DNA of 64,000 bases from Auanema rhodensis (GCA_964057225.1 OZ059894.1:16430001-16494000), one strand, 5' to 3'; shown: positions 26,501 through 50,500, counted from the stretch's first letter. Numbers and translations: made by a program. Notes: generated from the letters alone by a model not told the origin.

Positions 26501-29500
26501 TGGTTCATTGCAATTTTAAAAGAAATGCGGAAAAAAGAGAAATGCAGAATCAGAATACTGGAAGCAGAATGAAAAGACAACCATAAAAATGAACAAAATA
26601 ATGTTATTTAGTTGACATCAAAATAGAAACACAAATTGAAACTTTGCATGATGTTGTCTTTGCTCAAACTGCCTAGATGCTCGATGTGTTAGCATTGTAG
26701 CCAAGCGTCAAAAGTCTGACCAATAAGCCAAACCAGATGGCATAAGCAGGAGCACGAGGATAAACGAGTAGAGACTTTGGTTCAGGACAGCTCTAGCGTT
26801 TGGAAGAGGCAGATGAGCTAGAGGCTAAACGGAAGCAGAACCCAGCATGCATAGCACTGCCAGAGGTCTTTGCTCTCTCTATCCTTCTCTCTCTTCCTTT
26901 CTATAAATCCTTTCAATGTTCTCTTTCTCTCTATATGTCCCTATATTTTCTTTTTCTACCTCTTGCTCTTCTTCTCTCTTTGAATCTCTGGGTGACAAGC
27001 AGAATGAGGACGATGCTAATTAATAGAAGAAATATTGGTTCTGAAGGCTGAAGCACTTTCTGCCAATTCTCATTAAATAAACGGACCAGCAGCACCCAAC
27101 TGATTGTGTGTCATGTTATTTTAAAAAATAATAAATTTCAAGTACAAGGCATATACCTTGATATCCAAAAGAAAAAACATGCGAAAGCGCGTTGGCCTTT
27201 CATTCTATTGAGCAACTTTCGTTATAAATTTTGCCAAATAAAGTTTTAAATGTAAAACTTGGCGTGGAGTCAATGCGTTAAGTACGGAAATTATAACATC
27301 TTGTTCAATTTTATATATTCTGCTTCAAAATCAATAAAATTCGATATGCAAATTTGTCAAAAGAAAAGTTGGAATAAAGTAGTGTGTTGCTAAAAAAAAA
27401 AGCTTAGAAACTATTTTTATGAAAAATTGATATGATCAGAAAAGAATAATTCTCTTATTCTATGACTAATTTTAAAAATTTAATTAGAAAGATATGATTA
27501 GAATAATGAGAATAGTGAGAATATTTACGTGAAACGTGATTATATTATTCACGTGTAATCGAAAAAAATAATATTATTTTAATTTTCATTGAATAAGAGA
27601 ACGGTTGTTTTAATTTTTTTTTAAAAACTTATATTGATTATATATATAGTATACTATACTATATATATAATTGTTAAAAGAAAAGGAAATATTCAACTTC
27701 TTATACATATAATATGATTAGGCAGCTGATATTGAATACATTTCGATATCTAGCTAAACTACTGCTTAATGGAAAAATCAATTTGATTATGAGTTTTAAT
27801 GAGTTGGCAGCACCACGCAAAGTTTGAGTTTATAGGGGAAAAAGTTGGAGAAAAAGAAGTAAATGAAAGGAAAAGAAAGACAAAAGTTGAGATGAAAAGA
27901 ATGTTATGAATGAATGAGTTAATAAACTATCAAATATAATGTTACTAAAAAAGATTAAACTATATATTATTTATAATAATAATAATAATAATAATAATAA
28001 AATCAAACTATGAAAGGATTAGATAGTAGTTTAACGGTGCATACAACAAAAAAAATTTTTTGTTGCTCCGCTACTTCATTCAAAAATGCATAAGCTACTA
28101 GATCTCCGATGAAAGACGGAGAGATTGCTTATTAAGAACAGAACTTAAACGACACAGCAGACTGCCAAACAGGAAAAGCCCTATTCACACAAAATGTCAG
28201 ACAAGGTAGTCATATGGGCCAGATGAACCACAGTTTGACGACTTATAATTGGTGATCGATGGTGCTGAAGCATTTGATTGGCTGTGTGCTCTCTCTTTCT
28301 CTCTCTCCCTAGGAGGTAGCTGGGCTGGCTCTGAACTTTTACGTCTTTCTGCCATATTTCACGCCGCCAATGCCCTCAGATTATACTTGAATTGCAAAAG
28401 ATTACATTAGGAATTTTCCTTTTTTTCCTGATTACTTGTAAGTTCACAGAATGCAGGGAAAGAGGATTTGTAAAAGATTGATCCAAAAGAAGAGGAGATC
28501 AAGAAACATTTCAATTGCCTATATGACAGTATAACAAAAAAAAAGGATTGAACAAGGAAGTTAAAATTGAAGAATCTTCAAATTATCAAAATAATGATAC
28601 TGAATTGAGTTTTGAGGGAAGCACACACGATGGCAGTTGGCCAAAATAAAGTTTTGTTGTTGATAAAAGGTTGATTATAAGCATGCCAAGCATATTACAT
28701 ATGTTTGTAAACTGAAATTCAAATTTGACATGAACGTTATGGTAAAACCGGACAGGACAGACACAGCAAGACTTGAAATACAGACTTAATACTTGGAAAA
28801 ACACATTTTAGATGGTCTTCATACGTATTAAATGAACAAATAGAACAGTTCTGATAGATGAATCAAGATAGAGGAGCTTGGCAACGACAGGTCGACTGAT
28901 GACGACTCGACACACAGCAAACAAAACACCGCTAAACGGATAACACAGTTATAGTAAATCCTGTATAGCACTAGACGTTCAGACCTGAACACTCGACGGA
29001 ATCAGAAAAGCAACAGAAAACTGGGTAAGCTCAGAGGGTACTGGAAGAAACTCGTAAGGATGCTTCAAAATAATACAAGCAATAAGAGGTTAAACCCAGG
29101 AAGCAAGCATCACACGCAGAATAAAGAAGATATATACCAACCCGTGAGACTTTTGAACGGCGACATCTTCGTTTGACTAGCAGTTGTTGTTGCTGGCACA
29201 CTAGTTGTCGTAGTCTTCCGTCGATGATGTACTGACGTAGTTGACACAGTGGTTGTGATTGGTCTAGGCACCATTTGAGTTGTTCGACTGCCAGTAAGCG
29301 AACTGTTCTTGCTCGGACGCCAAGCAGGTCCAGTTACCATTGGCTCCGGAAGCAAGTCTATGTCGGCCCATATACTGTCGCCTAGATATTCAGGATTCTG
29401 TTCAGCTGCAGCACTAACACTTTCATATGGTCTTGGTAAAACTGTGACACGTGTAGATGCTCTGGTAGTTTGGATGTTAGGAGAAACTGTGCTGTTTTTA

Positions 29501-32500
29501 GACGTCGGGCGCCCGACGGGTGCGTGATGGCCCGGAAGCCGTGCGTCTGATCCGAGTTGCGACACGTGTTGCCGCGAATCTGAACCCGGTCGAGCATGTG
29601 GAGCCTGAGGCGCGATGGGATGTGGTGGCATCACAGTGGGGAGAGATTTCGGTGCCGTGGTGCGTCTGGCTTGAGTGGCTGCAGTTGTCGAAAGTGGCGA
29701 CAAAGTTGAATCTATATCGGATGCTTCTGTGCCTTCGATAGAGGAGAGATATATAATAGAAGGAGGAGTTAAAGGTGAAGAGCTACTAGTAGTGGAATAA
29801 GAAGAAGATTTAAAATCAGAAGAACTATAAGAAGGTGGTGGGACTGGTCGTGAGACGACGGAAGTTCGGGTAGAATCTGCAGACTTTCTAGGAGACTCAC
29901 CACGAACTGCAGAGGATGGTGGATTATTAGTAGTAGCACGTCGAGGAGCAGTAACCGCGGACGGAATCACTGGAATGAAGAAGCCTGCAAGAAAATAGAT
30001 TAGATGTTTTTGTCAAAGTTGAAAGAAAATATTTTAATATTTTTTCTCTTTTTAGCTTTTTGTTCGAAAAAAGAATGCATCATCATGTATTTTTCAGGAT
30101 GTATCGAACCGGAATCAGAATAATCTTCGTGAGACTGATAATCTTCTTGGCTGCTCCCGTGGAACGACATCGAATTCATACGATTTCGAGTAGCATCCAA
30201 ACGACTCGAATCGAAATTTGGAGCAAATCGTGGAGGTGGCGGAGCATTCAGACGACATTTTGGAGAGTTCCAATCCATCAAACAGAGGATTGGTAACACT
30301 GTGCTTGTCATCACAATCATCCATAGGGGCGGGTCCTGTGTATTTACATGACATAATCAAACAGATCATATTCTCATTAAGAGAAAGAAGTACGTGTTGA
30401 ATAATTCTATTTGGAACAATGAACATGAAACATTGGCATTTGGTTAACACAGAGAGCAAAGAGAAAGGATCAAATTTCTAATAGTTTGAGTTCAAATTGG
30501 AAGGTGGTTAGTAGATAGCAATATAGCCTTCAGAAATCTCATCTATCAAGTTTCGGGATGGAAAGAAATAAAAAAATAGAAAAAAGGCTCAACAAAAGGA
30601 ATAAACTGAACATGGATACATGAATATACAGCATGTATATGATCATATGAGGAAAATTGGGGTTAGATGAGCAATTTGAAGACATCGACTACATAGATAC
30701 TACTATTACTTACAATACATCGAAAGGATATTATAAGGTTTTATAAGAAAGAGGAAATGACCTTCATTTCAAGCAAAAACAAGGTATAGTATAGAAAATT
30801 TTCTAAACATATACATATATATATATATATATATATATTTTACTATGTTTCGATATAATATATTATAAAAGAATAATATTAAGTAAAGGGTTGGAAACGA
30901 GGTAATAGCAGAGTTTGAGATTGCTGATTTTGAAAAAAAAAAGAATAATCTTTTCATACAAAAATTGTTTATATGTAAACATAATATACTAATATATACT
31001 ATATAGTTTAAAAAAAAGGAAAAAATAACATCAGCTTGAAAAAAAAGTAAAATAGGAATAGATCAATGAGTATTGCAAGAAAATAATCTGAGAATGTGAG
31101 AAAAGCACATATTGCCTTGTTTCTTTCATTATATTGGAAAGAGTCAAAGAAAATGAAAGATATTTGGAGGGATGAAAGTTGAAAGTTGCTTATGAGTAGA
31201 TATTTGAAAATTATATGGAAAAATGAATAAAATTTGGAATAACGAAGACACAAAAATGAAGATGATGGCATGGCTTGTGACTGAGAAGAGCAATATTTCA
31301 AAAAGTTTTTAGATGAAATTAATTAGAATTACAATTAAAATAATAATTGAAACTTCTTTACATGAGTTTCTCGAAGAAACAATAGATATGAACAAGAGTT
31401 CGTTAAGTTGCCAAATAAAAAAAATATAATTAAAATGGAAAAGTAAGTGAAAGGATAAGAAAATCAGAGATGACTATGTTAATTAGATATGCACTAATAT
31501 AATTCCTTTCTGCCATCAAAGTTTTAAAAAGTTTTGAAAATAAGGAAAAAGAGAAGAAGGATAGATGTATTCCAAACAATTTCTGGAAACGAATTCTCAA
31601 GGAAAACAAGGAAGAGGTTTCAGATGTGAAACATGCTCTCTGGTGAAAGAAGGAAAAAAGAAAAAGAGAAAACATGAAGAATGACGAATAACTTGGTAAA
31701 TGAAGTACAAAGTTGATACTTTATCAACTAAACTTAAAGCTTGCGCTAGTTGTGCTCCATGATGAACGTTATGGTATTGGAGAGAGAGGGGAAGAACAAT
31801 AGATGAGCATTAGACTAATCATGACTTATATAAGATTTTCATAGTTAAAGAGTGCGAATATAAATATGACTATAGTTAACTATGTGCTTCTCTTGAGAAT
31901 GAATGAAAATAGAGAGGGGAAGAGAGAAAAAGAGACAAATAGAGAGAGAGAGAGAGAGAAAGAGAGGGAGAGAATAGGTCTTAAGGCCTTTATAGGAAGT
32001 GAGCTCTTCACAGTTATGCAAGGTTATGAATCCAGATGGCGCAACTGTTTGATTTTCAGTTCTTCATCTATTCTATCTCTTCCTATTCTCATGGCCTCTT
32101 AGCTGTAGAGATATCAAGGAAACGGCTCATCCCTCCCTCTCCCCCATCTTCGTCATCAACTAAAATACACGAAGGACAAAGCAAGTGTCGATAGCTAGCA
32201 AGCATGTGCTGACCAAAAGGGTTGTCTCACACTCTATTCCTTGATGTACGCCCCAGCTTGCTACTATCGACTTCCAGATTCTTAGCAAATTCAATCATTC
32301 CGACGACAAAACAATTTTTGAGCTCACGATGGCAGGAAAGACGACCAAATACTTTTTCTTAGTATAACGTATATATCAAGAGCTCAGATTATATATATAT
32401 ATAGTATATAACATATAGATAGATGTATGGATCAAGGTTATTTCGTAAACGAACAGTATGACACGTTCAGTCAAGCTGTTGCTTTTGAAAAACAAGTTTC

Positions 32501-44500: not shown

Positions 44501-47500
44501 CATACAAATCCAAAATTGGCAATCCATTAAAGTTGATTCCAGAAATCTCTCCGTGAAAAGGGTCATATAGACGAATATCATTACTTCGAGTATATCTGAA
44601 TGATTGATAAAGCTTATCAATAAACACTATTATATACCGAGTTTGATCAGTTTTCTGTAGATGAAGAGTATTCATAGATGATCCAATGAGTAATCTCCAA
44701 TGCATATTTAACGTTGTCAATTCAATACCTTCTAAAAATATTCACATAATTAAAATATTAAATATAATTAAACCTTTAGGTGCATATCGAACTGGACTAG
44801 AATTATCTAATTGAAGAGTTACATTGTATTCATAACGGAATAATTTAACAGTATGTAGTTTCCCATCATTGACAGTTTTCGATAAAACACCAAAATGATG
44901 TTGACCACTTCCGAGATCAAATCTCAGATGTAGTATTCCTTCATCCTGTAATTAATAGAATATGATTTGATTGATATTAAAAGAAAGTTTCAAACAATAT
45001 AAAGTGTGAAGAAATCGGGTTCTGCCGATGATTCAACAGAAAACAATACTCCTGATAATTCTTTTGTACTGAATGCTATAACCATGAAGTCTTTAGATGT
45101 GCTTGGCATTTCTCCGGGTGGATACTCATAGTAGATACCAGATGCTTCCCCATTGAAGGAAAATGTGGTTGCAGCTTCAAAAAGCAGTTTAGTTACATTT
45201 CGAAAATAAAACAGAATTACGTTGACTGCATTTTGGTCCAGCATATCCGGATAGAGTGCAATCACAAAATATGTTGGTCCATCGTTGTATACATCGACCA
45301 CCATTCGAACAAGCAAAAGGTGAGCATCGTGATACAGGTCCTAAACAATCTCAATTACATAATGCTAAGCAGAAGTGTATAATATTGCAGTTCTAAACAA
45401 CATTCAATGATATTAGATGCATTGAGACAAGTGATAGTGAGGAAAAAAGCAGTGAAATTACAGCCAAGAAAAAGAATAAGAAAAAATTTCGGAGAATTGC
45501 AGAAGTAGTAATATAGAGCATAACTTGTATACATATATATTATATATACATATTTAGTTATACTCGTGAATATAGATATACATTTATAAATCTACATTAT
45601 ATCTAGTTTACCTATAGTTTTATAATTATGTCTTAGATGATGACTAGCTGTAAAAGAAGTAATTTCCTCATTCAGAAGGAAATATTATAAATATTATAGT
45701 TGAAAGATAGCATATTTTGATTCAAAAATATATGTATATGTATGTATATGAATTACCGTTGCAACCCTTTGCGATACTATGCATTGAATTAGCTTCTTCC
45801 ATTATATCTATCAAACGATCATTCAGACGCAAAGTTGAAATACAACCACGAAAACCAGTAGCTGACAGAGCACCATGAGCAGCTAAAGATGGCGGAATGC
45901 CTCCTATAATAAATAATATAAATATATATTCACATAATTTAGCTGAGACCTAAAACAGCTGGACCAGTTGGAACAAATATGGAGCTTGCAGCAGTGTTAT
46001 TCATAGGAATCGATGATGTTGTGTTATCAATAAGAAGCACATGTTCCATAGTATCAGGATTCTACAGCAACTTAAGTTTTAAAAAAGCATAAAATGTTGT
46101 TATTTACCTGATATACAAGTACAGTATGCCATCTCATGTCACTTAGATGTTGCTTATTTGAAAGTCTTGGAGATGTAATTGAACCTTCAGTTTTACCAAA
46201 TCGAAAAGAGTATCGAACTCTAGAAACAGAATGACACTATCATGATTGAAATTATGCAAACCTGGCATTAACTAGTTGGATTGTCATGAAGTTAGGTGAA
46301 TTAACTGGCAAATATGCAAATAGTAAAGACATTCTAACAAGAGTTTGAAATTTAAATGAAACCCGAAAATGACCCGTTAGTGAAGATATCTGAATCAAAA
46401 TAATAATTATGTGTATATAAATTATTATAAAATACTTTATCTGAACTAAAAGAAACGAAACCCGTTGAGTTTGTGAATGAAACCGACAATTGTTTTGATT
46501 TTCTGAAAGAAGCAAATACTTTTAAAATTATTAAAACCTGAAAACTACATGTTTCGAAGTCCCTTATTCTCTTTACTCGATTTTCCTTCTTTTCGAATTT
46601 TATTCAATAAATCGATGCTATTAAAATTCTGAAAAAAAGGAAAAACTATATTGAAAATACATATGGAGGTGATTTTACTAATTGACTAATATGCCCTTTA
46701 AAAGGTGATTGAATACGATCATCAGGTTTGAACGATCGTGCTCCAACGACTTCATCTATTTCTATTACAAGTGAAGAATTTAAGGTATCTGAATATATAT
46801 ATATTGAATATACTAATTAACATTGAACATTCATACAGCTGCTTCCCCATTTTCCATCAAAGTGCAACAGCATATGATTTCCTCGTCTTTTAACTTTGGC
46901 TGTATGCCATTTATTATCTGTAACTAGTTCTCCCCACATATGAACCTATAATCAATTTTATATATTATTTATAATATATTAACATACAGTTTTAGATGTA
47001 GATGTTTGTAATACAATATGTAGCATTCCATCTAATATGAATACAGATAGGAAATTTGAAGGATGTGCATTCGAACGAGTTTCGAGAAGACAGCCACGCA
47101 TTTGGTCGGTCTGATAAACAATTAGATAATTTCATTACAAACAAAAACTTTAATATTAACTTACTTTGAATCGAACTTCAATATTTTCAGCTTCAGACAT
47201 GGTAGATCGTGGGTATATGAACAGCATATTTTGTTCTCCGTCAATTGAATAAAACACCGGATCTGATTCGAAAAGTATTTAGGTTGAAACATATATGACA
47301 GATATACCAGCATTACAAGTTGGTCCAACCATGCTTGTTTGGGTACAATCACATTTGAAGGATAATGTTCCAGAAACGCATTTTCCATAGTTATGACATG
47401 GATTAGGTGAACAGTTATCCTTTCGTGTTGGACATCCCAGAGAAACACCTATTCAAGTTTGTAACAACAAAAGCTTCTAAAGCTTACCTGTTGTATTAGA

Positions 47501-50500
47501 ACTTTCAAAAGCTGATGCGATCTTGGCACTAATTCCATTAAGACGAACATTCTTGATACAACCAATAAAAGACTATAAATAGAATAATTATATTTTTCTC
47601 TTAACGTTTAACAATTACTTTTCGTAAAGATATGGACCAAATTGATGAAGGATATATGAAATTGGACGGAGGTAAGCCACCAATCAAGAGTGGATCAACT
47701 ATATTTAGTATTCATTAATTTATGTTAATAATGATACGAATAACTCACCAACATCCAAATTTGCTGATGTTCCAGGAGTATTGAAATCAGTCTTATGACT
47801 ATTTACAATAATCTTTCCTTGTCTTCTTATTCGTTCCATATAAACAAAATTCCAATCATTTGTATCAGTCAAACGTTTGAATGTAGTTTGTAAACGTATT
47901 GATCCTGCTCCAAGATCTATTATCATGTACAGATGACCATCAATCAGTTCAAAAGCTAAATACTCGGAAGAATTGTCAATCATTGAGCTTAATAAAAATA
48001 TTAAGCCATCAGGCTCAGTTGAACGAAAATGGAAAGCTGTAAAAAAAGATATTTATTATATCTTTCATAAAGTATAACTAACATATACTTCCACCTTTAG
48101 CATCACCTGTCCATTTAGGTAACACGAGAGGGCTTGAGCCTGAATGAAACGATAATACATCGGCTGGTTGTGCAGGATTTTTGCATGAAAAAGATAAATC
48201 TCCTCCTAAATAAGAATAAAAATATAAATACTATATAGGTAATATACCTGTTCTTATAATGCTATCACCATAACCTTCATCAGCCAAGCTTACAAAGTTT
48301 ATGCGTAAAGAATCAGCAGCATATTGAACCTGTTAACTATAATTAGTCAATTGTAAACAAACTATAACTAACCATCTTCAAACATCCTCTAAATGGAACC
48401 CTATTTACATTTTTGATATCATTATCCTTTGGAATTCCCCCAACATATACGAATGAATTATAAATCCAATCCATTTCAGGAGCATACTGTCGAATTTGAT
48501 CTTTCTGGTCATCGACTCGTAGTCTCATCTAGAACAAATGATATTCTTCCGTCAAACAACAAACCCAGAAGCCAGAACATCATATTTTCAATCATCATAT
48601 CAGAATATCATGCACTTTGAACACAGGGATGAAAACCAATAAAGGAAAAAAAACAAAATGAAAGCTGGAGAAAAAGCGTTAAGCCACACCCTCCACCGTA
48701 TTCGAAACGTGAAACGATGGACCGTTAGTAAGTAATAGGAGAAGCGAAGAACTGATTGAAACAAAAAAAAGGAGGAGAGGAAATTCAATGCAATGGGTCA
48801 TAACTTACATGAACTGCTGCTGTCTTTTCAGAATGCTAAAGAAGGTAACATGGTTAGAATACAACAACAACAAGCAGAGGGAAAAAACGTTAGAGCTTTA
48901 GAATGAGTTATTAAAGTTGAATAACATTCTTTTATAGGAACTATGCTATAAATTATAATGCAATATAATTATAATATTATTTATGTGATTACTGATTAGG
49001 AAATCACAAATATAATTAATATATGTTTATAAAAGTTATTAGAACTATTGATTTTAAACTCACAATTTGTAGAGTCCTCTCCAATGTTACTGTATGCCAT
49101 GTATCGTCATCATAACGTTCTGCTGGAAATTTATTGAAAAGCCGGATTATTCTAACATCTGTTCCTTCGAGTTTTGAAGCAGCTATCATAGCTCCATTTT
49201 CTAATGTTAATAGAAAATAACTCTTAAAATATAATTTGGTAATTCGGAAATAATTTTTTCATTATTTCAACCTTTTCGTCTCCGGCAAAGAATATAATAG
49301 CTGTTCCATGAACAGTTTTGAATGATAACGTGATATTCTCAGATTTAGTTCGAATAATCGCTGATATGTTTTTTGAAACATCGTATCCAATCCATTCTTG
49401 GCCACTGAATGTCAGCTCAGCATCAGTTTTTTCTTAATATGATAAATAAATAATAATTAAGACTAGATATCGTTACCTATATCACAGAATTTTCCTTCGT
49501 GATCACTGTTAGAACAATCACATTGTGGCCCTTCATTAGTTGAGAAACACGTTCCAAAATTTTGACATTCAAATACTTCTCTTGATGATACCTAAAATAC
49601 AATAACATTATAATTTAATAATTAAATTGAATAATCGTACGCCTGAAGGACGACAATAGTTGTCATCTGTATGCCTGATTCCTTGTCCATCGATGAGCTG
49701 CGGTGATGTTTCGCCTAAACAAAAGTTAAGATAATCACAACCGCTGCTGGTAGATTTGAAATTAAAAATGAAATGTAAAAAACACATAGTAAATCGCGTA
49801 ATTCATTAGCATATTACGTTAATTATAAATATAATTATGAAAGTACCAATAATCAATATTATAATACTACTATATTAGCATATAATTAAACAAATTATAT
49901 TCTTTACCTTGAGGATATAATCTATATACTAGATTACGAATATTTGCAGCTAAATGTATGGAAAAACGACGTAAGGGTGATGATAATCGGGGAAGAAGAT
50001 GTATATCCTATAAATATCAAGTATATCTTTAAATAGAATTATTTTATAATCAAAAAACATACAGCTGGAATACCGCCAACAAATACATCAGAATTCTTAT
50101 GAATATTTCCAAAAACAAAACTACGTTGGTTGAGAATTTTAAAAACTAGCGTAAAATCTAGTTCTAGTTTTACATTTTCGAAACTCTGAAATAGGTTCTA
50201 AGTGAATTTCAAATTTATTTTAACTTATAAGACCTGATGCAGTCTTAACGTGTGCCACCTATCATCATCAACTCTGATTTCATCTATTCGAATAGTTGTA
50301 ACTGGACGTTGGTGCCGGAAGTCATTTGAGTTGTCTCCCAACCTAAAGATCAAATGTTATCTATCAAAAAATCATGAAAATAATACCTAAAATCGAGCTG
50401 AATATGCCCATCATTTATCGAAATAGCATAGAAATTTCCATTCACCCCACTGTCATCAGTGTATAGAATAAGTCCATTTGATTGTCGAGTTTTGAGCTCT

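What the first reader, a model, noticed from the sequence alone, without database searches (positions are those of the whole stretch)
48809..48835. 27-nt microexon HSEKTAAVH at the position of vertebrate neurexin splice site 2
Seen: ttctttag|27 nt|gtaagtt, phase 0-0, inserted between ...WHTVTLERTLQI and MRLRVDD in LNS2. Known: the vertebrate SS2 insert (HSGIGHAM, +/- VNKLHCS) sits between WHDVKVTRNLRQ and VTISVDG at the LNS2 Ca2+/ligand surface and blocks alpha-dystroglycan binding. Inference: same position, similar length and the same His-Ser start suggest an ancient, homologous SS2 microexon rather than a vertebrate invention.
Basis: partly seen in the sequence, partly recalled or inferred. 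Interest (0 to 1): 0.8.

Follow-up and report, generated by a model that had tools for sequence, protein, structure and literature searches.

The report
Conserved nematode neurexin SS2-site microexon
A 27-base optional exon in a roundworm neurexin gene sits exactly where vertebrate neurexins carry their "splice site 2" insert; it is conserved across nematodes and matched by a same-sized exon in a beetle, so this way of tuning a synaptic adhesion protein is not only a vertebrate feature.

Summary
On the minus strand, 48835..48809 is a 27-nt, phase 0-0, stop-free segment (HSEKTAAVH) with AG/GT borders. It lies in the 535-nt intron that splits LNS2 of the nrx-1 (alpha-neurexin) gene of an Auanema-like rhabditid nematode.

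It is not a chance ORF. Auanema sp. JU1783 has the same peptide in the orthologous intron; the only three base differences are synonymous, and the intron around it is unalignable. The same 9-residue insert occurs at this junction in C. elegans genomic DNA. It is also in gene models of C. briggsae, C. angaria, Pristionchus, Mesorhabditis, Nippostrongylus and Dirofilaria. The last two have paired isoforms with and without it.

RNA contigs of this species join the flanking exons directly. Skipping is therefore the assembled form, and inclusion is not shown here.

HMMER and Foldseek place the insert at the vertebrate SS2 position. AlphaFold models give a loop plus a strand extension, as in mouse SS2A.

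A beetle has a stand-alone 27-nt exon at this site, and an oyster isoform has a 9-residue insert. The listed echinoderm, hemichordate and Clavelina isoforms have none. The site is therefore ancient in protostomes; common descent with the vertebrate exon is possible but unproven. I found no paper describing it.

The parts
48809..48835 (-). 27-nt cassette microexon, phase 0-0, encoding HSEKTAAVH
   Evidence: The identical peptide, with only 3 synonymous changes, is at L001:2654-2680. Homologous 9-residue inserts occur in other nematodes.
48836..48860 (-). 3' splice site region (tctttAG) with pyrimidine-rich run
   Evidence: TTTAG is invariant in the window, Auanema JU1783, C. elegans and S. ratti.
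48795..48808 (-). 5' splice site GTAAGTT plus conserved following bases
   Evidence: GTAAGTT is invariant in four nematodes.
49064..49222 (-). Constitutive upstream LNS2 exon (159 nt), ends ...WHTVTLERTLQI
   Evidence: RNA contigs X1 record 2 and X2 record 9; translation.
48370..48528 (-). Constitutive downstream LNS2 exon (159 nt), starts MRLRVDDQKD
   Evidence: RNA contigs; Pfam Laminin_G_2, E 1.3e-05.
48529..49063 (-). 535-nt intron that hosts the microexon; most mapped neighbouring introns are 39-54 nt
   Evidence: Joints table and pieces table.
48661..48694 (-). Conserved intronic block about 115-150 nt downstream of the microexon (GGAGRGTGTGGCTT ... GCTTTTTCTCCWGCTTT); candidate splicing control element
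   Evidence: Island of identity with Auanema JU1783 in an otherwise unalignable intron; coordinates. The function is inferred.
48609..48614 (-). TGCATG (Rbfox/FOX-1/ASD-1-type motif) 195 nt downstream of the microexon
   Evidence: GCATG lies at +196, +180, +197 and +82 in the window, JU1783, C. elegans and D. immitis, and never upstream. This is a post hoc observation and a hypothesis only.
48585..48595 (-). Conserved intronic block ATGATTGAAAA
23539..50989 (-). The mapped part of the nrx-1 (alpha-neurexin) gene that contains the microexon
   Evidence: tblastn of P0001 and C. elegans NRX-1 P0153 against the window; spliced RNA contigs.

Best explanation
Window 48835..48809 (minus strand) is a real, evolutionarily conserved cassette microexon of the nrx-1/alpha-neurexin gene of an Auanema-like rhabditid nematode. 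When included, it inserts nine residues (HSEKTAAVH) into LNS2 between ...RTLQI and MRLRVDD. This is the same place as the vertebrate splice site 2 (SS2) insert.

Shown:
- The exon and both splice sites are conserved under coding constraint.
- The same insert exists across nematodes, as alternative isoforms in at least two species.
- The form assembled from RNA of this species skips it.

Modelled: the first four residues make the turn and the last five lengthen the following beta strand, so the beta-hairpin at this edge of LNS2 becomes longer. This is the geometry described for mouse SS2A.

Inferred: inclusion is restricted to a minority of cells or stages, probably neuron subsets. It may be helped by downstream intronic elements, including a GCATG. 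It switches the binding properties of LNS2 for an as yet unknown nematode ligand.

The 27-nt exon at this site most likely dates at least to the ecdysozoan, probably the protostome, ancestor. Whether it shares descent with the vertebrate SS2A exon is open (about 0.35-0.4).
For: Coding constraint:
- Against Auanema sp. JU1783 the microexon is 24/27 identical. All 3 differences are third-position and synonymous, with 0/9 residue changes.
- The flanking constitutive exons are only 72-74% identical, with 8 and 14 residue changes in 53. The rest of the intron does not align.

Same insert at the same junction in other nematodes:
- C. elegans genomic DNA has ttttAG|27 nt|GTaagttt encoding HSEEMVAIH at L003:5526-5552.
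- C. briggsae, C. angaria, Pristionchus (2 species), Mesorhabditis and Nippostrongylus models carry H[ST][ED]x..A[IV]H.
- D. immitis has RTTSIASVH as a separate 27-nt exon.
- S. ratti has a candidate NSMATTTVI with the same splice-site context.

Alternative use:
- The two D. immitis products differ only by these 9 residues.
- N. brasiliensis has products with and without it under one locus tag.
- In this species, RNA contigs X1 and X2 join 49064 to 48528 directly.

Position:
- HMMER aligns the insert to SS2A of 6pnq_A. The score is 57.0 bits, against 48.3 bits for the insert-free chain 6pnp_A.
- The Foldseek top hits are the neurexin-1 LNS2 structures, with the SS2A+ one first.

Structure:
- AlphaFold2 with the insert gives strand 100-110, turn 111-114, strand 115-124 (pLDDT 85.7).
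- Without the insert it gives strand 100-107, turn 108-109, strand 110-115.
- Mouse SS2A has HAM extending beta9 and HSGIG as a loop (PMC6856630).

Outside nematodes:
- The beetle Exocentrus has a stand-alone 27-nt phase 0-0 exon (ISAITSFCR) at the same column.
- An oyster isoform has LTVGNAKYI there, and a near-identical mRNA-contig ORF lacks it.
Against: - No transcript of this species containing the 27 nt was seen. All four RNA runs are assembled contigs, which drop minor isoforms, so this is absence of evidence.
- I could not check what transcript evidence lies behind the gene models of other species.
- The Ca2+-site Asp needed for dystroglycan binding in vertebrates (D345N kills binding, PMC2150755) aligns with Ser/Asn in rhabditid LNS2.
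- Neurexophilins are absent from invertebrates (PMC6856630). The vertebrate ligand logic therefore cannot simply be transferred.
- The GCATG observation is post hoc, with a rough chance of about 1-2% over three independent lineages.
- Against deep homology: the insert sequences of different phyla share little, and the listed echinoderm, hemichordate and Clavelina isoforms lack any insert.
Confidence: 0.8

Rival explanations
1. Independent origins. The vertebrate SS2A exon and the protostome 27-nt exon arose separately by exonisation in the same ancestral phase-0 intron. That intron interrupts a surface beta-hairpin that tolerates extension. The resemblance (position, size, HS start) would then be convergent.
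For: - The inserts of different phyla share almost no sequence.
- HS is found only in vertebrates and clade V nematodes.
- No insert is present in any listed isoform of Asterias rubens/amurensis, Holothuria, Clavelina or Ptychodera.
- The neighbouring AS4 exon has been argued to have arisen de novo in chordates (PMC3933685).
Against: - The column and phase are the same, and the size is nearly the same (24 against 27 nt).
- The predicted loop-plus-strand geometry is the same.
- The isoform sets of non-model deuterostomes may miss neuron-restricted microexons.
- The ascidian Phallusia has a 10-residue segment at this column.
Confidence: 0.55
2. The 27 nt is a conserved non-coding intronic element, such as a splicing or transcriptional control sequence. 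It is never translated in this species, and the gene models that include it elsewhere are annotation artefacts.
For: Only the skipped form is assembled from RNA here. Other conserved non-coding blocks exist in the same intron.
Against: - All substitutions between the two Auanema species are synonymous, and between genera they conserve the peptide pattern rather than the bases.
- The AG and GTAAGT borders are invariant.
- The length is always 27 nt, with no stop codons in any species.
- Two species carry paired isoforms differing only by this exon.
Confidence: 0.05
3. Chance open reading frame with chance splice-like borders.
For: Short AG...GT in-frame segments are common in AT-rich introns in general.
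Against: Only one such 27-nt candidate exists in this intron. It is the one conserved in seven or more nematode genera.
Confidence: 0.01

Closest known systems
Vertebrate neurexin splice site 2, insert SS2A (mouse Nrxn1 379-HSGIGHAM-386)
   Same: - Same gene family and same LNS2 domain.
- Same alignment column, between ...R-x-L-x-x and the strand x-T-[IL]-x-V-D.
- An in-frame mini-exon that is used optionally.
- The N-terminal part forms a loop and the C-terminal part extends the next beta strand.
- Starts with His-Ser in clade V nematodes.
   Different: - 27 nt / 9 residues instead of 24 nt / 8, with no counterpart of the extra 7-residue SS2B extension.
- The known vertebrate readers of SS2 do not transfer. 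Neurexophilin is absent from invertebrates.
- The Ca2+-site Asp required for dystroglycan binding is Ser/Asn in rhabditid LNS2.
- Common descent is unproven.
Insect Nrx-1 27-nt exon encoding IS[AS][IG]TSFCR (present in gene models; I found no description of it as SS2-like)
   Same: In the beetle Exocentrus it is a stand-alone 27-nt, phase 0-0 exon at the identical column (L007:6725-6751). It has the same length as the nematode exon.
   Different: - It contains a Cys and has little sequence similarity.
- It is present in all five arthropod representatives seen.
- In Drosophila grimshawi it is fused to the upstream exon, so it may be constitutive there.
- The beetle has TGC next to the 3' splice site; the nematodes do not.
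Agrin LG-domain splice inserts (y and z sites)
   Same: These are small optional inserts in laminin-G domains that modulate ligand binding. Agrin LG structures titled 'Modulation of agrin function by alternative splicing and Ca2+ binding' are among the structural matches of the LNS2 model.
   Different: A different protein and different positions in the fold. This is an analogy of principle only.
Neurexin AS4/SS4 exon
   Same: An optional exon in a neurexin LNS domain that switches ligands.
   Different: It lies in LNS6 and is 90 nt long. It is reported as absent from fly, nematode and sea urchin and as a chordate novelty (PMC3933685). The SS2-site exon, in contrast, is present in protostomes.

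Membership tests
alpha-neurexin (NRX-1 orthologue) | Ectodomain of repeated LNS(LamG)-EGF-LNS units | tested here: met
   Pfam Laminin_G hits on window exons. The closest protein, P0001, carries PF02210/PF00054/PF00008. tblastn of P0001 and C. elegans NRX-1 covers window 50547-23539.
alpha-neurexin (NRX-1 orthologue) | Single transmembrane segment and C-terminal PDZ-binding tail of the ...E[WY]YV type | tested here: met
   The P0001 C-terminus is ...KKKDFKEWYV. Its last 50 residues align to window 23706-23539 at 75% identity.
Neurexin SS2 alternative insert | Insert lies in LNS2 between the residues equivalent to mouse Q378 and V394 | tested here: met
   HMMER alignment to 6pnq_A and 3r05_A; multiple alignments; Foldseek top hits are Nrxn1 LNS2.
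Neurexin SS2 alternative insert | Encoded by a separate in-frame mini-exon flanked by introns | tested here: met
   27 nt, AG/GT borders, phase 0-0, flanked by introns of 228 and 280 nt.
Neurexin SS2 alternative insert | Both insert-plus and insert-minus mRNAs are made | tested here: inconclusive
   In this species only the skipped form is seen in contigs of 4 RNA runs. In D. immitis and N. brasiliensis both forms are annotated from one locus. Raw reads were not available.
Neurexin SS2 alternative insert | Insert sequence related to HSGIGHAM | tested here: inconclusive
   HS and one Ala align, and the score is 8.7 bits higher against the SS2A+ chain than against the insert-free chain. The insert is too short, and other nematode, insect and oyster inserts do not share HS.
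Neurexin SS2 alternative insert | N-terminal half is a loop and the C-terminal half extends the following beta strand | tested here: met
   AlphaFold2 models with and without the insert, compared with the description of the crystal structure (PMC6856630). This is a model, not an experiment.
Neurexin SS2 alternative insert | Insert switches dystroglycan / neurexophilin binding | not testable with these tools
   This needs binding assays. As caveats, the Ca2+-site Asp is replaced by Ser/Asn and invertebrates have no neurexophilins.
SRRM4/eMIC-type neural microexon | Length of 27 nt or less, multiple of three | tested here: met
   27 nt.
SRRM4/eMIC-type neural microexon | UGC-containing element just upstream of the 3' splice site (from my knowledge of that programme) | tested here: not met
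   There is no TGC in the last 25 nt before the AG in the window, Auanema JU1783, C. elegans or D. immitis. It is present in the beetle.
SRRM4/eMIC-type neural microexon | Neuron-restricted inclusion | not testable with these tools
   No tissue-resolved raw reads were available.

The most novel reading that the evidence does not exclude
The SS2 microexon is a single ancestral bilaterian invention. In this reading, a roughly 24-27-nt optional exon in the LNS2 hairpin has been kept for more than 500 million years in vertebrates, nematodes, arthropods and molluscs, and lost or overlooked in echinoderms, hemichordates and some tunicates. It would be one of the oldest regulated neuronal microexons, and its original ligand switch could be studied genetically in C. 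elegans.
Probability: 0.35. Interest if true: 0.8.

Novelty: new member of a known kind. Interest (0 to 1): 0.62.

Why it matters
Reviews state that extensive neurexin alternative splicing is exclusive to vertebrates, and that invertebrate neurexins are not reported to be extensively spliced (PMC12665717; PMC10084454). The only C. elegans nrx-1 cassette I found in the literature is the large stalk exon 24 (PMC3627589).

This work shows a conserved optional 27-nt exon at the SS2 position in nematodes, including the C. elegans genome, and a same-sized exon in a beetle. SS2-type regulation of LNS2 is therefore not a vertebrate novelty. Its function becomes testable in a genetically tractable animal with a single neurexin gene, no neurexophilins and a known wiring diagram. 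The finding also warns that nrx-1 rescue constructs built from the insert-free isoform may lack one natural form.

The exon is already present in several public gene models. What is new is its recognition and interpretation, not the sequence.

Tried and rejected
- Single-exon queries were too short. The PDB search with the 53-residue exon gave only weak laminin hits, one frame was mistyped, and Pfam found nothing for the 44-residue piece.
- A brute-force intron enumeration to complete the gene model timed out. I replaced it with three-frame reading and tblastn.
- I hoped to find spliced Logan mRNA ORFs spanning the junction by using a 141-residue C. elegans fragment. Only genomic exon-sized ORFs came back. 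One of them did give the C. elegans genomic contig.
- Locus look-ups failed for C. elegans P0153, C. briggsae P0182, oyster P0165 and Trichinella P0054. The spider gene was too long. The oyster insert and clade I nematodes could therefore not be checked in DNA.
I also could not see WormBase isoform tables, so the C. elegans exon may already be an annotated isoform.
- An eMIC-type UGC element upstream of the exon was looked for and not found in nematodes.
- The contig ends exactly at 48528 (X14) and at 49065 (X4) might reflect a branch in the assembly graph at this junction. Low depth or pre-mRNA explain them equally well, so I do not count them.

Full report
**1. The observation**

On the minus strand the sequence reads ccttctttAG, then 27 nt (nine codons, HSEKTAAVH, no stop), then GTaagttatg. 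The motif search places the 27 nt at 48809-48835.

Spliced RNA contigs define the flanking exons as 49222-49064 and 48528-48370. Both are 159 nt and phase 0-0. They end in ...WHTVTLERTLQI and start with MRLRVDDQKD.

The intron between them is 535 nt, whereas most mapped neighbouring introns are 39-54 nt. It contains only two in-frame stop-free AG...GT candidates of 15-39 nt. Both share the same donor, so this is the only 27-nt candidate.

**2. Gene and organism**

- Window exons hit Pfam Laminin_G.
- A full HMMER scan with the 95-residue exon 48034-47750 returned as best hit P0001 (94% identity, 1570 aa). P0001 is an unnamed product of Auanema sp. JU1783 with LamG/EGF repeats and the tail ...KKKDFKEWYV.
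- tblastn of P0001 and of C. elegans NRX-1 (P0153, Q18291) covers the window from about 50550 down to 23539 on the minus strand.
- The gene is therefore the nrx-1/alpha-neurexin orthologue of an Auanema-like rhabditid. The species names of the sequencing runs are coded.

**3. RNA of this species**

Four runs of one study hold spliced copies of the gene. Every joint is GT..AG on the minus strand, so they are cDNA.

In X1 (record 2) and X2 (record 9), positions 773/774 and 613/614 of the contig pass directly from 48528 to 49064. No contig piece or inserted letters lie on the 27 nt.

The assembled, presumably major, isoform therefore skips the exon. These are contigs, which drop minor variants. 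Raw reads were not on offer and the single read-laying run is used, so inclusion in this species is neither shown nor excluded.

**4. Conservation between two Auanema species**

The orthologous intron of Auanema sp. JU1783 (L001:2524-2937, 414 nt) contains ctttAG, 27 nt, GTaagtt at L001:2654-2680. It encodes the identical peptide.

| Segment | Nucleotide identity | Residue changes |
|---|---|---|
| Microexon | 89% (24/27) | 0 of 9 |
| Upstream flanking exon | 74% | 8 of 53 |
| Downstream flanking exon | 72% | 14 of 53 |

The three microexon differences are all at third codon positions and synonymous. In the flanking exons more than half of the third positions differ.

In the pairwise intron alignment the exon and its immediate splice-site flanks form an island. 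The rest is essentially unalignable apart from two or three short downstream blocks. This is the signature of a translated exon under purifying selection.

**5. Conservation across nematodes**

At exactly this junction:

| Species | Insert | Source |
|---|---|---|
| C. briggsae CBR-NRX-1 | HSEEMVAIH | gene model |
| C. angaria | HSEEMMAIH | gene model |
| Pristionchus entomophagus, P. mayeri | HTDRISAVH | gene models |
| Mesorhabditis belari | HSEKVSAIH | gene model |
| Nippostrongylus brasiliensis | HSDRISAVH | gene model |
| Dirofilaria immitis | RTTSIASVH | gene model; separate 27-nt exon at L002:4936-4962, introns of 541 and 1370 nt |
| C. elegans | HSEEMVAIH | genomic DNA only; ttttAG / GTaagttt at L003:5526-5552 inside the 614-nt intron. 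The protein model P0153 lacks it. |
| Strongyloides ratti | NSMATTTVI (candidate) | tttAG / GTaagttt in a 347-nt intron |

- The two annotated D. immitis products differ only by these nine residues.
- N. brasiliensis has products with and without the insert under one locus tag.
- TTTAG and GTAAGTT are invariant in the four-species alignment.
- Trichinella and Trichuris models show no insert, and I could not fetch their DNA.

**6. Equivalence with SS2**

HMMER aligns the C. briggsae LNS2 with bovine and mouse neurexin-1 LNS2. It places HSEEMVAIH-M against HSGIGHA-M of the SS2A-containing chain 6pnq_A. The score is 57.0 bits, against 48.3 bits for the insert-free chain 6pnp_A.

Mouse SS2A is 379-HSGIGHAM-386. 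HAM extends beta9 and HSGIG is a disordered loop (PMC6856630).

An AlphaFold2 model of the Mesorhabditis LNS2 with the insert (pLDDT 85.7) has strand 100-110, turn 111-114 (HSEK) and strand 115-124 (VSAIH plus LVLTV). The insert-free Auanema JU1783 LNS2 has strand 100-107, a two-residue turn and strand 110-115. In the models, the exon therefore lengthens a surface beta-hairpin by several residues per strand, as SS2A does.

Foldseek ranks the SS2A+ LNS2 crystal structure first, then the other Nrxn1 LNS2 structures.

**7. Outside nematodes**

| Taxon | At the same column | Call |
|---|---|---|
| Arthropod representatives | 9-10 residues: ISSITSFCR (fly), ISSGTSFCR (locust), ISAITSFCR (beetle), ITRATGFCH (spider), LVDSGHSVCY (barnacle) | 35, 36 |
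| Beetle Exocentrus | stand-alone 27-nt phase 0-0 exon, ttgcAG / GTaagtg, L007:6725-6751 | 82 |
| Drosophila grimshawi | fused to the upstream exon | 58 |
| Oyster | isoform X7 has LTVGNAKYI; an mRNA-contig ORF in the same 90% cluster lacks it | 55 |
| Annelid Owenia | 5.6-kb phase-0 intron, with a weak 27-nt candidate | 71 |
| Honeybee | an intron at human site 2 was reported | PMC2570956, |
| Asterias rubens/amurensis (9 isoforms), Holothuria (3 transcript ORFs), Clavelina (10 isoforms), Ptychodera (2 isoforms) | no insert | 78, 79 |
| Ascidian Phallusia | unrelated 10-residue segment | 35 |

My reading is that a 27-nt exon at this site is old in protostomes. Its relation to the vertebrate 24-nt exon is certainly positional, but possibly only convergent.

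**8. Regulation (hypothesis)**

- GCATG, the core of the Rbfox/FOX-1/ASD-1 site (from my knowledge of that family), lies +196, +180, +197 and +82 nt downstream of the exon in the window, JU1783, C. elegans and D. immitis. It never lies upstream.
- The two Auanema species share further downstream blocks at 48661-48694 and 48585-48595.
- No UGC element of the SRRM4/eMIC type precedes the 3' splice site in nematodes.

**9. Function and caveats**

In vertebrates SS2 inserts abolish Ca2+-dependent alpha-dystroglycan binding (PMC2150755) and strengthen neurexophilin binding (PMC6856630).

Invertebrates have no neurexophilins. The Asp whose mutation kills dystroglycan binding aligns with Ser or Asn in rhabditid LNS2.

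I therefore infer the same kind of mechanism, a lengthened hairpin at the ligand-binding edge that changes partner choice. I do not infer the same partners.

**10. Literature**

- Reviews state that extensive splicing is vertebrate-exclusive.
- No paper in the library combines nrx-1 with microexon.
- The only C. elegans nrx-1 cassette I found is the 528-nt exon 24, regulated by UNC-75.
- The evolution of AS4, but not of SS2, has been analysed.
- I could not inspect WormBase isoforms or the supplements of the C. elegans splicing atlases.

Noticed in passing
The depth in its bin is fully explained by the exon that starts at 45757, and 45400-45596 has depth 0. If it is real, it is also a minor form.
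   Followed up: partly
window 29122-29985 (stalk exon region): C. elegans nrx-1 has a published UNC-75-dependent cassette, exon 24 (528 nt) (PMC3627589). Its size suggests it may lie in the mucin-like stalk. It may be the counterpart of the optional stalk segment flagged in this window (s1-422598). I did not compare the sequences.
   Followed up: no
window 49272-49300 and alignment A2, columns about 55-70: The LNS2 Asp that coordinates Ca2+ in vertebrates (...ADYVNL) is Ser or Asn in rhabditid nematodes (...GDEK-SYFLL here). Arthropods, molluscs and annelids keep Asp. The nematode LNS2 may bind Ca2+ differently or not at all.
   Followed up: partly
L007:6646-6751 (beetle Exocentrus adspersus): The insect 27-nt exon has TGC directly at its 3' splice site (ttgcAG) and only a 79-nt upstream intron. 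This context resembles SRRM4/eMIC-dependent microexons, unlike the nematode exon.
   Followed up: no
L006:6822-6848 (annelid Owenia fusiformis): In the 5.6-kb intron at the SS2 position there is a 27-nt in-frame candidate, acAG / GTaagtaa, encoding LIVDKGIGY. It faintly resembles the oyster insert LTVGNAKYI. It is one of six candidates and has no support.
   Followed up: no
proteins P0013, P0022, P0035, P0040, P0187, P0029: Several public nematode neurexin models start at the Met that opens the exon just after the SS2 intron. Others carry odd insertions at the junction (23 residues in Heterorhabditis, 'vgnl' in Wuchereria). These look like prediction errors caused by this long intron.
   Followed up: no
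window 48528 and 49065 (contig ends): Contig X14 record 5 begins exactly at the downstream exon's first base. X4 record 14 ends one base before the upstream exon's last base. This could be a graph branch at an alternatively spliced junction, or simply low depth.
   Followed up: no
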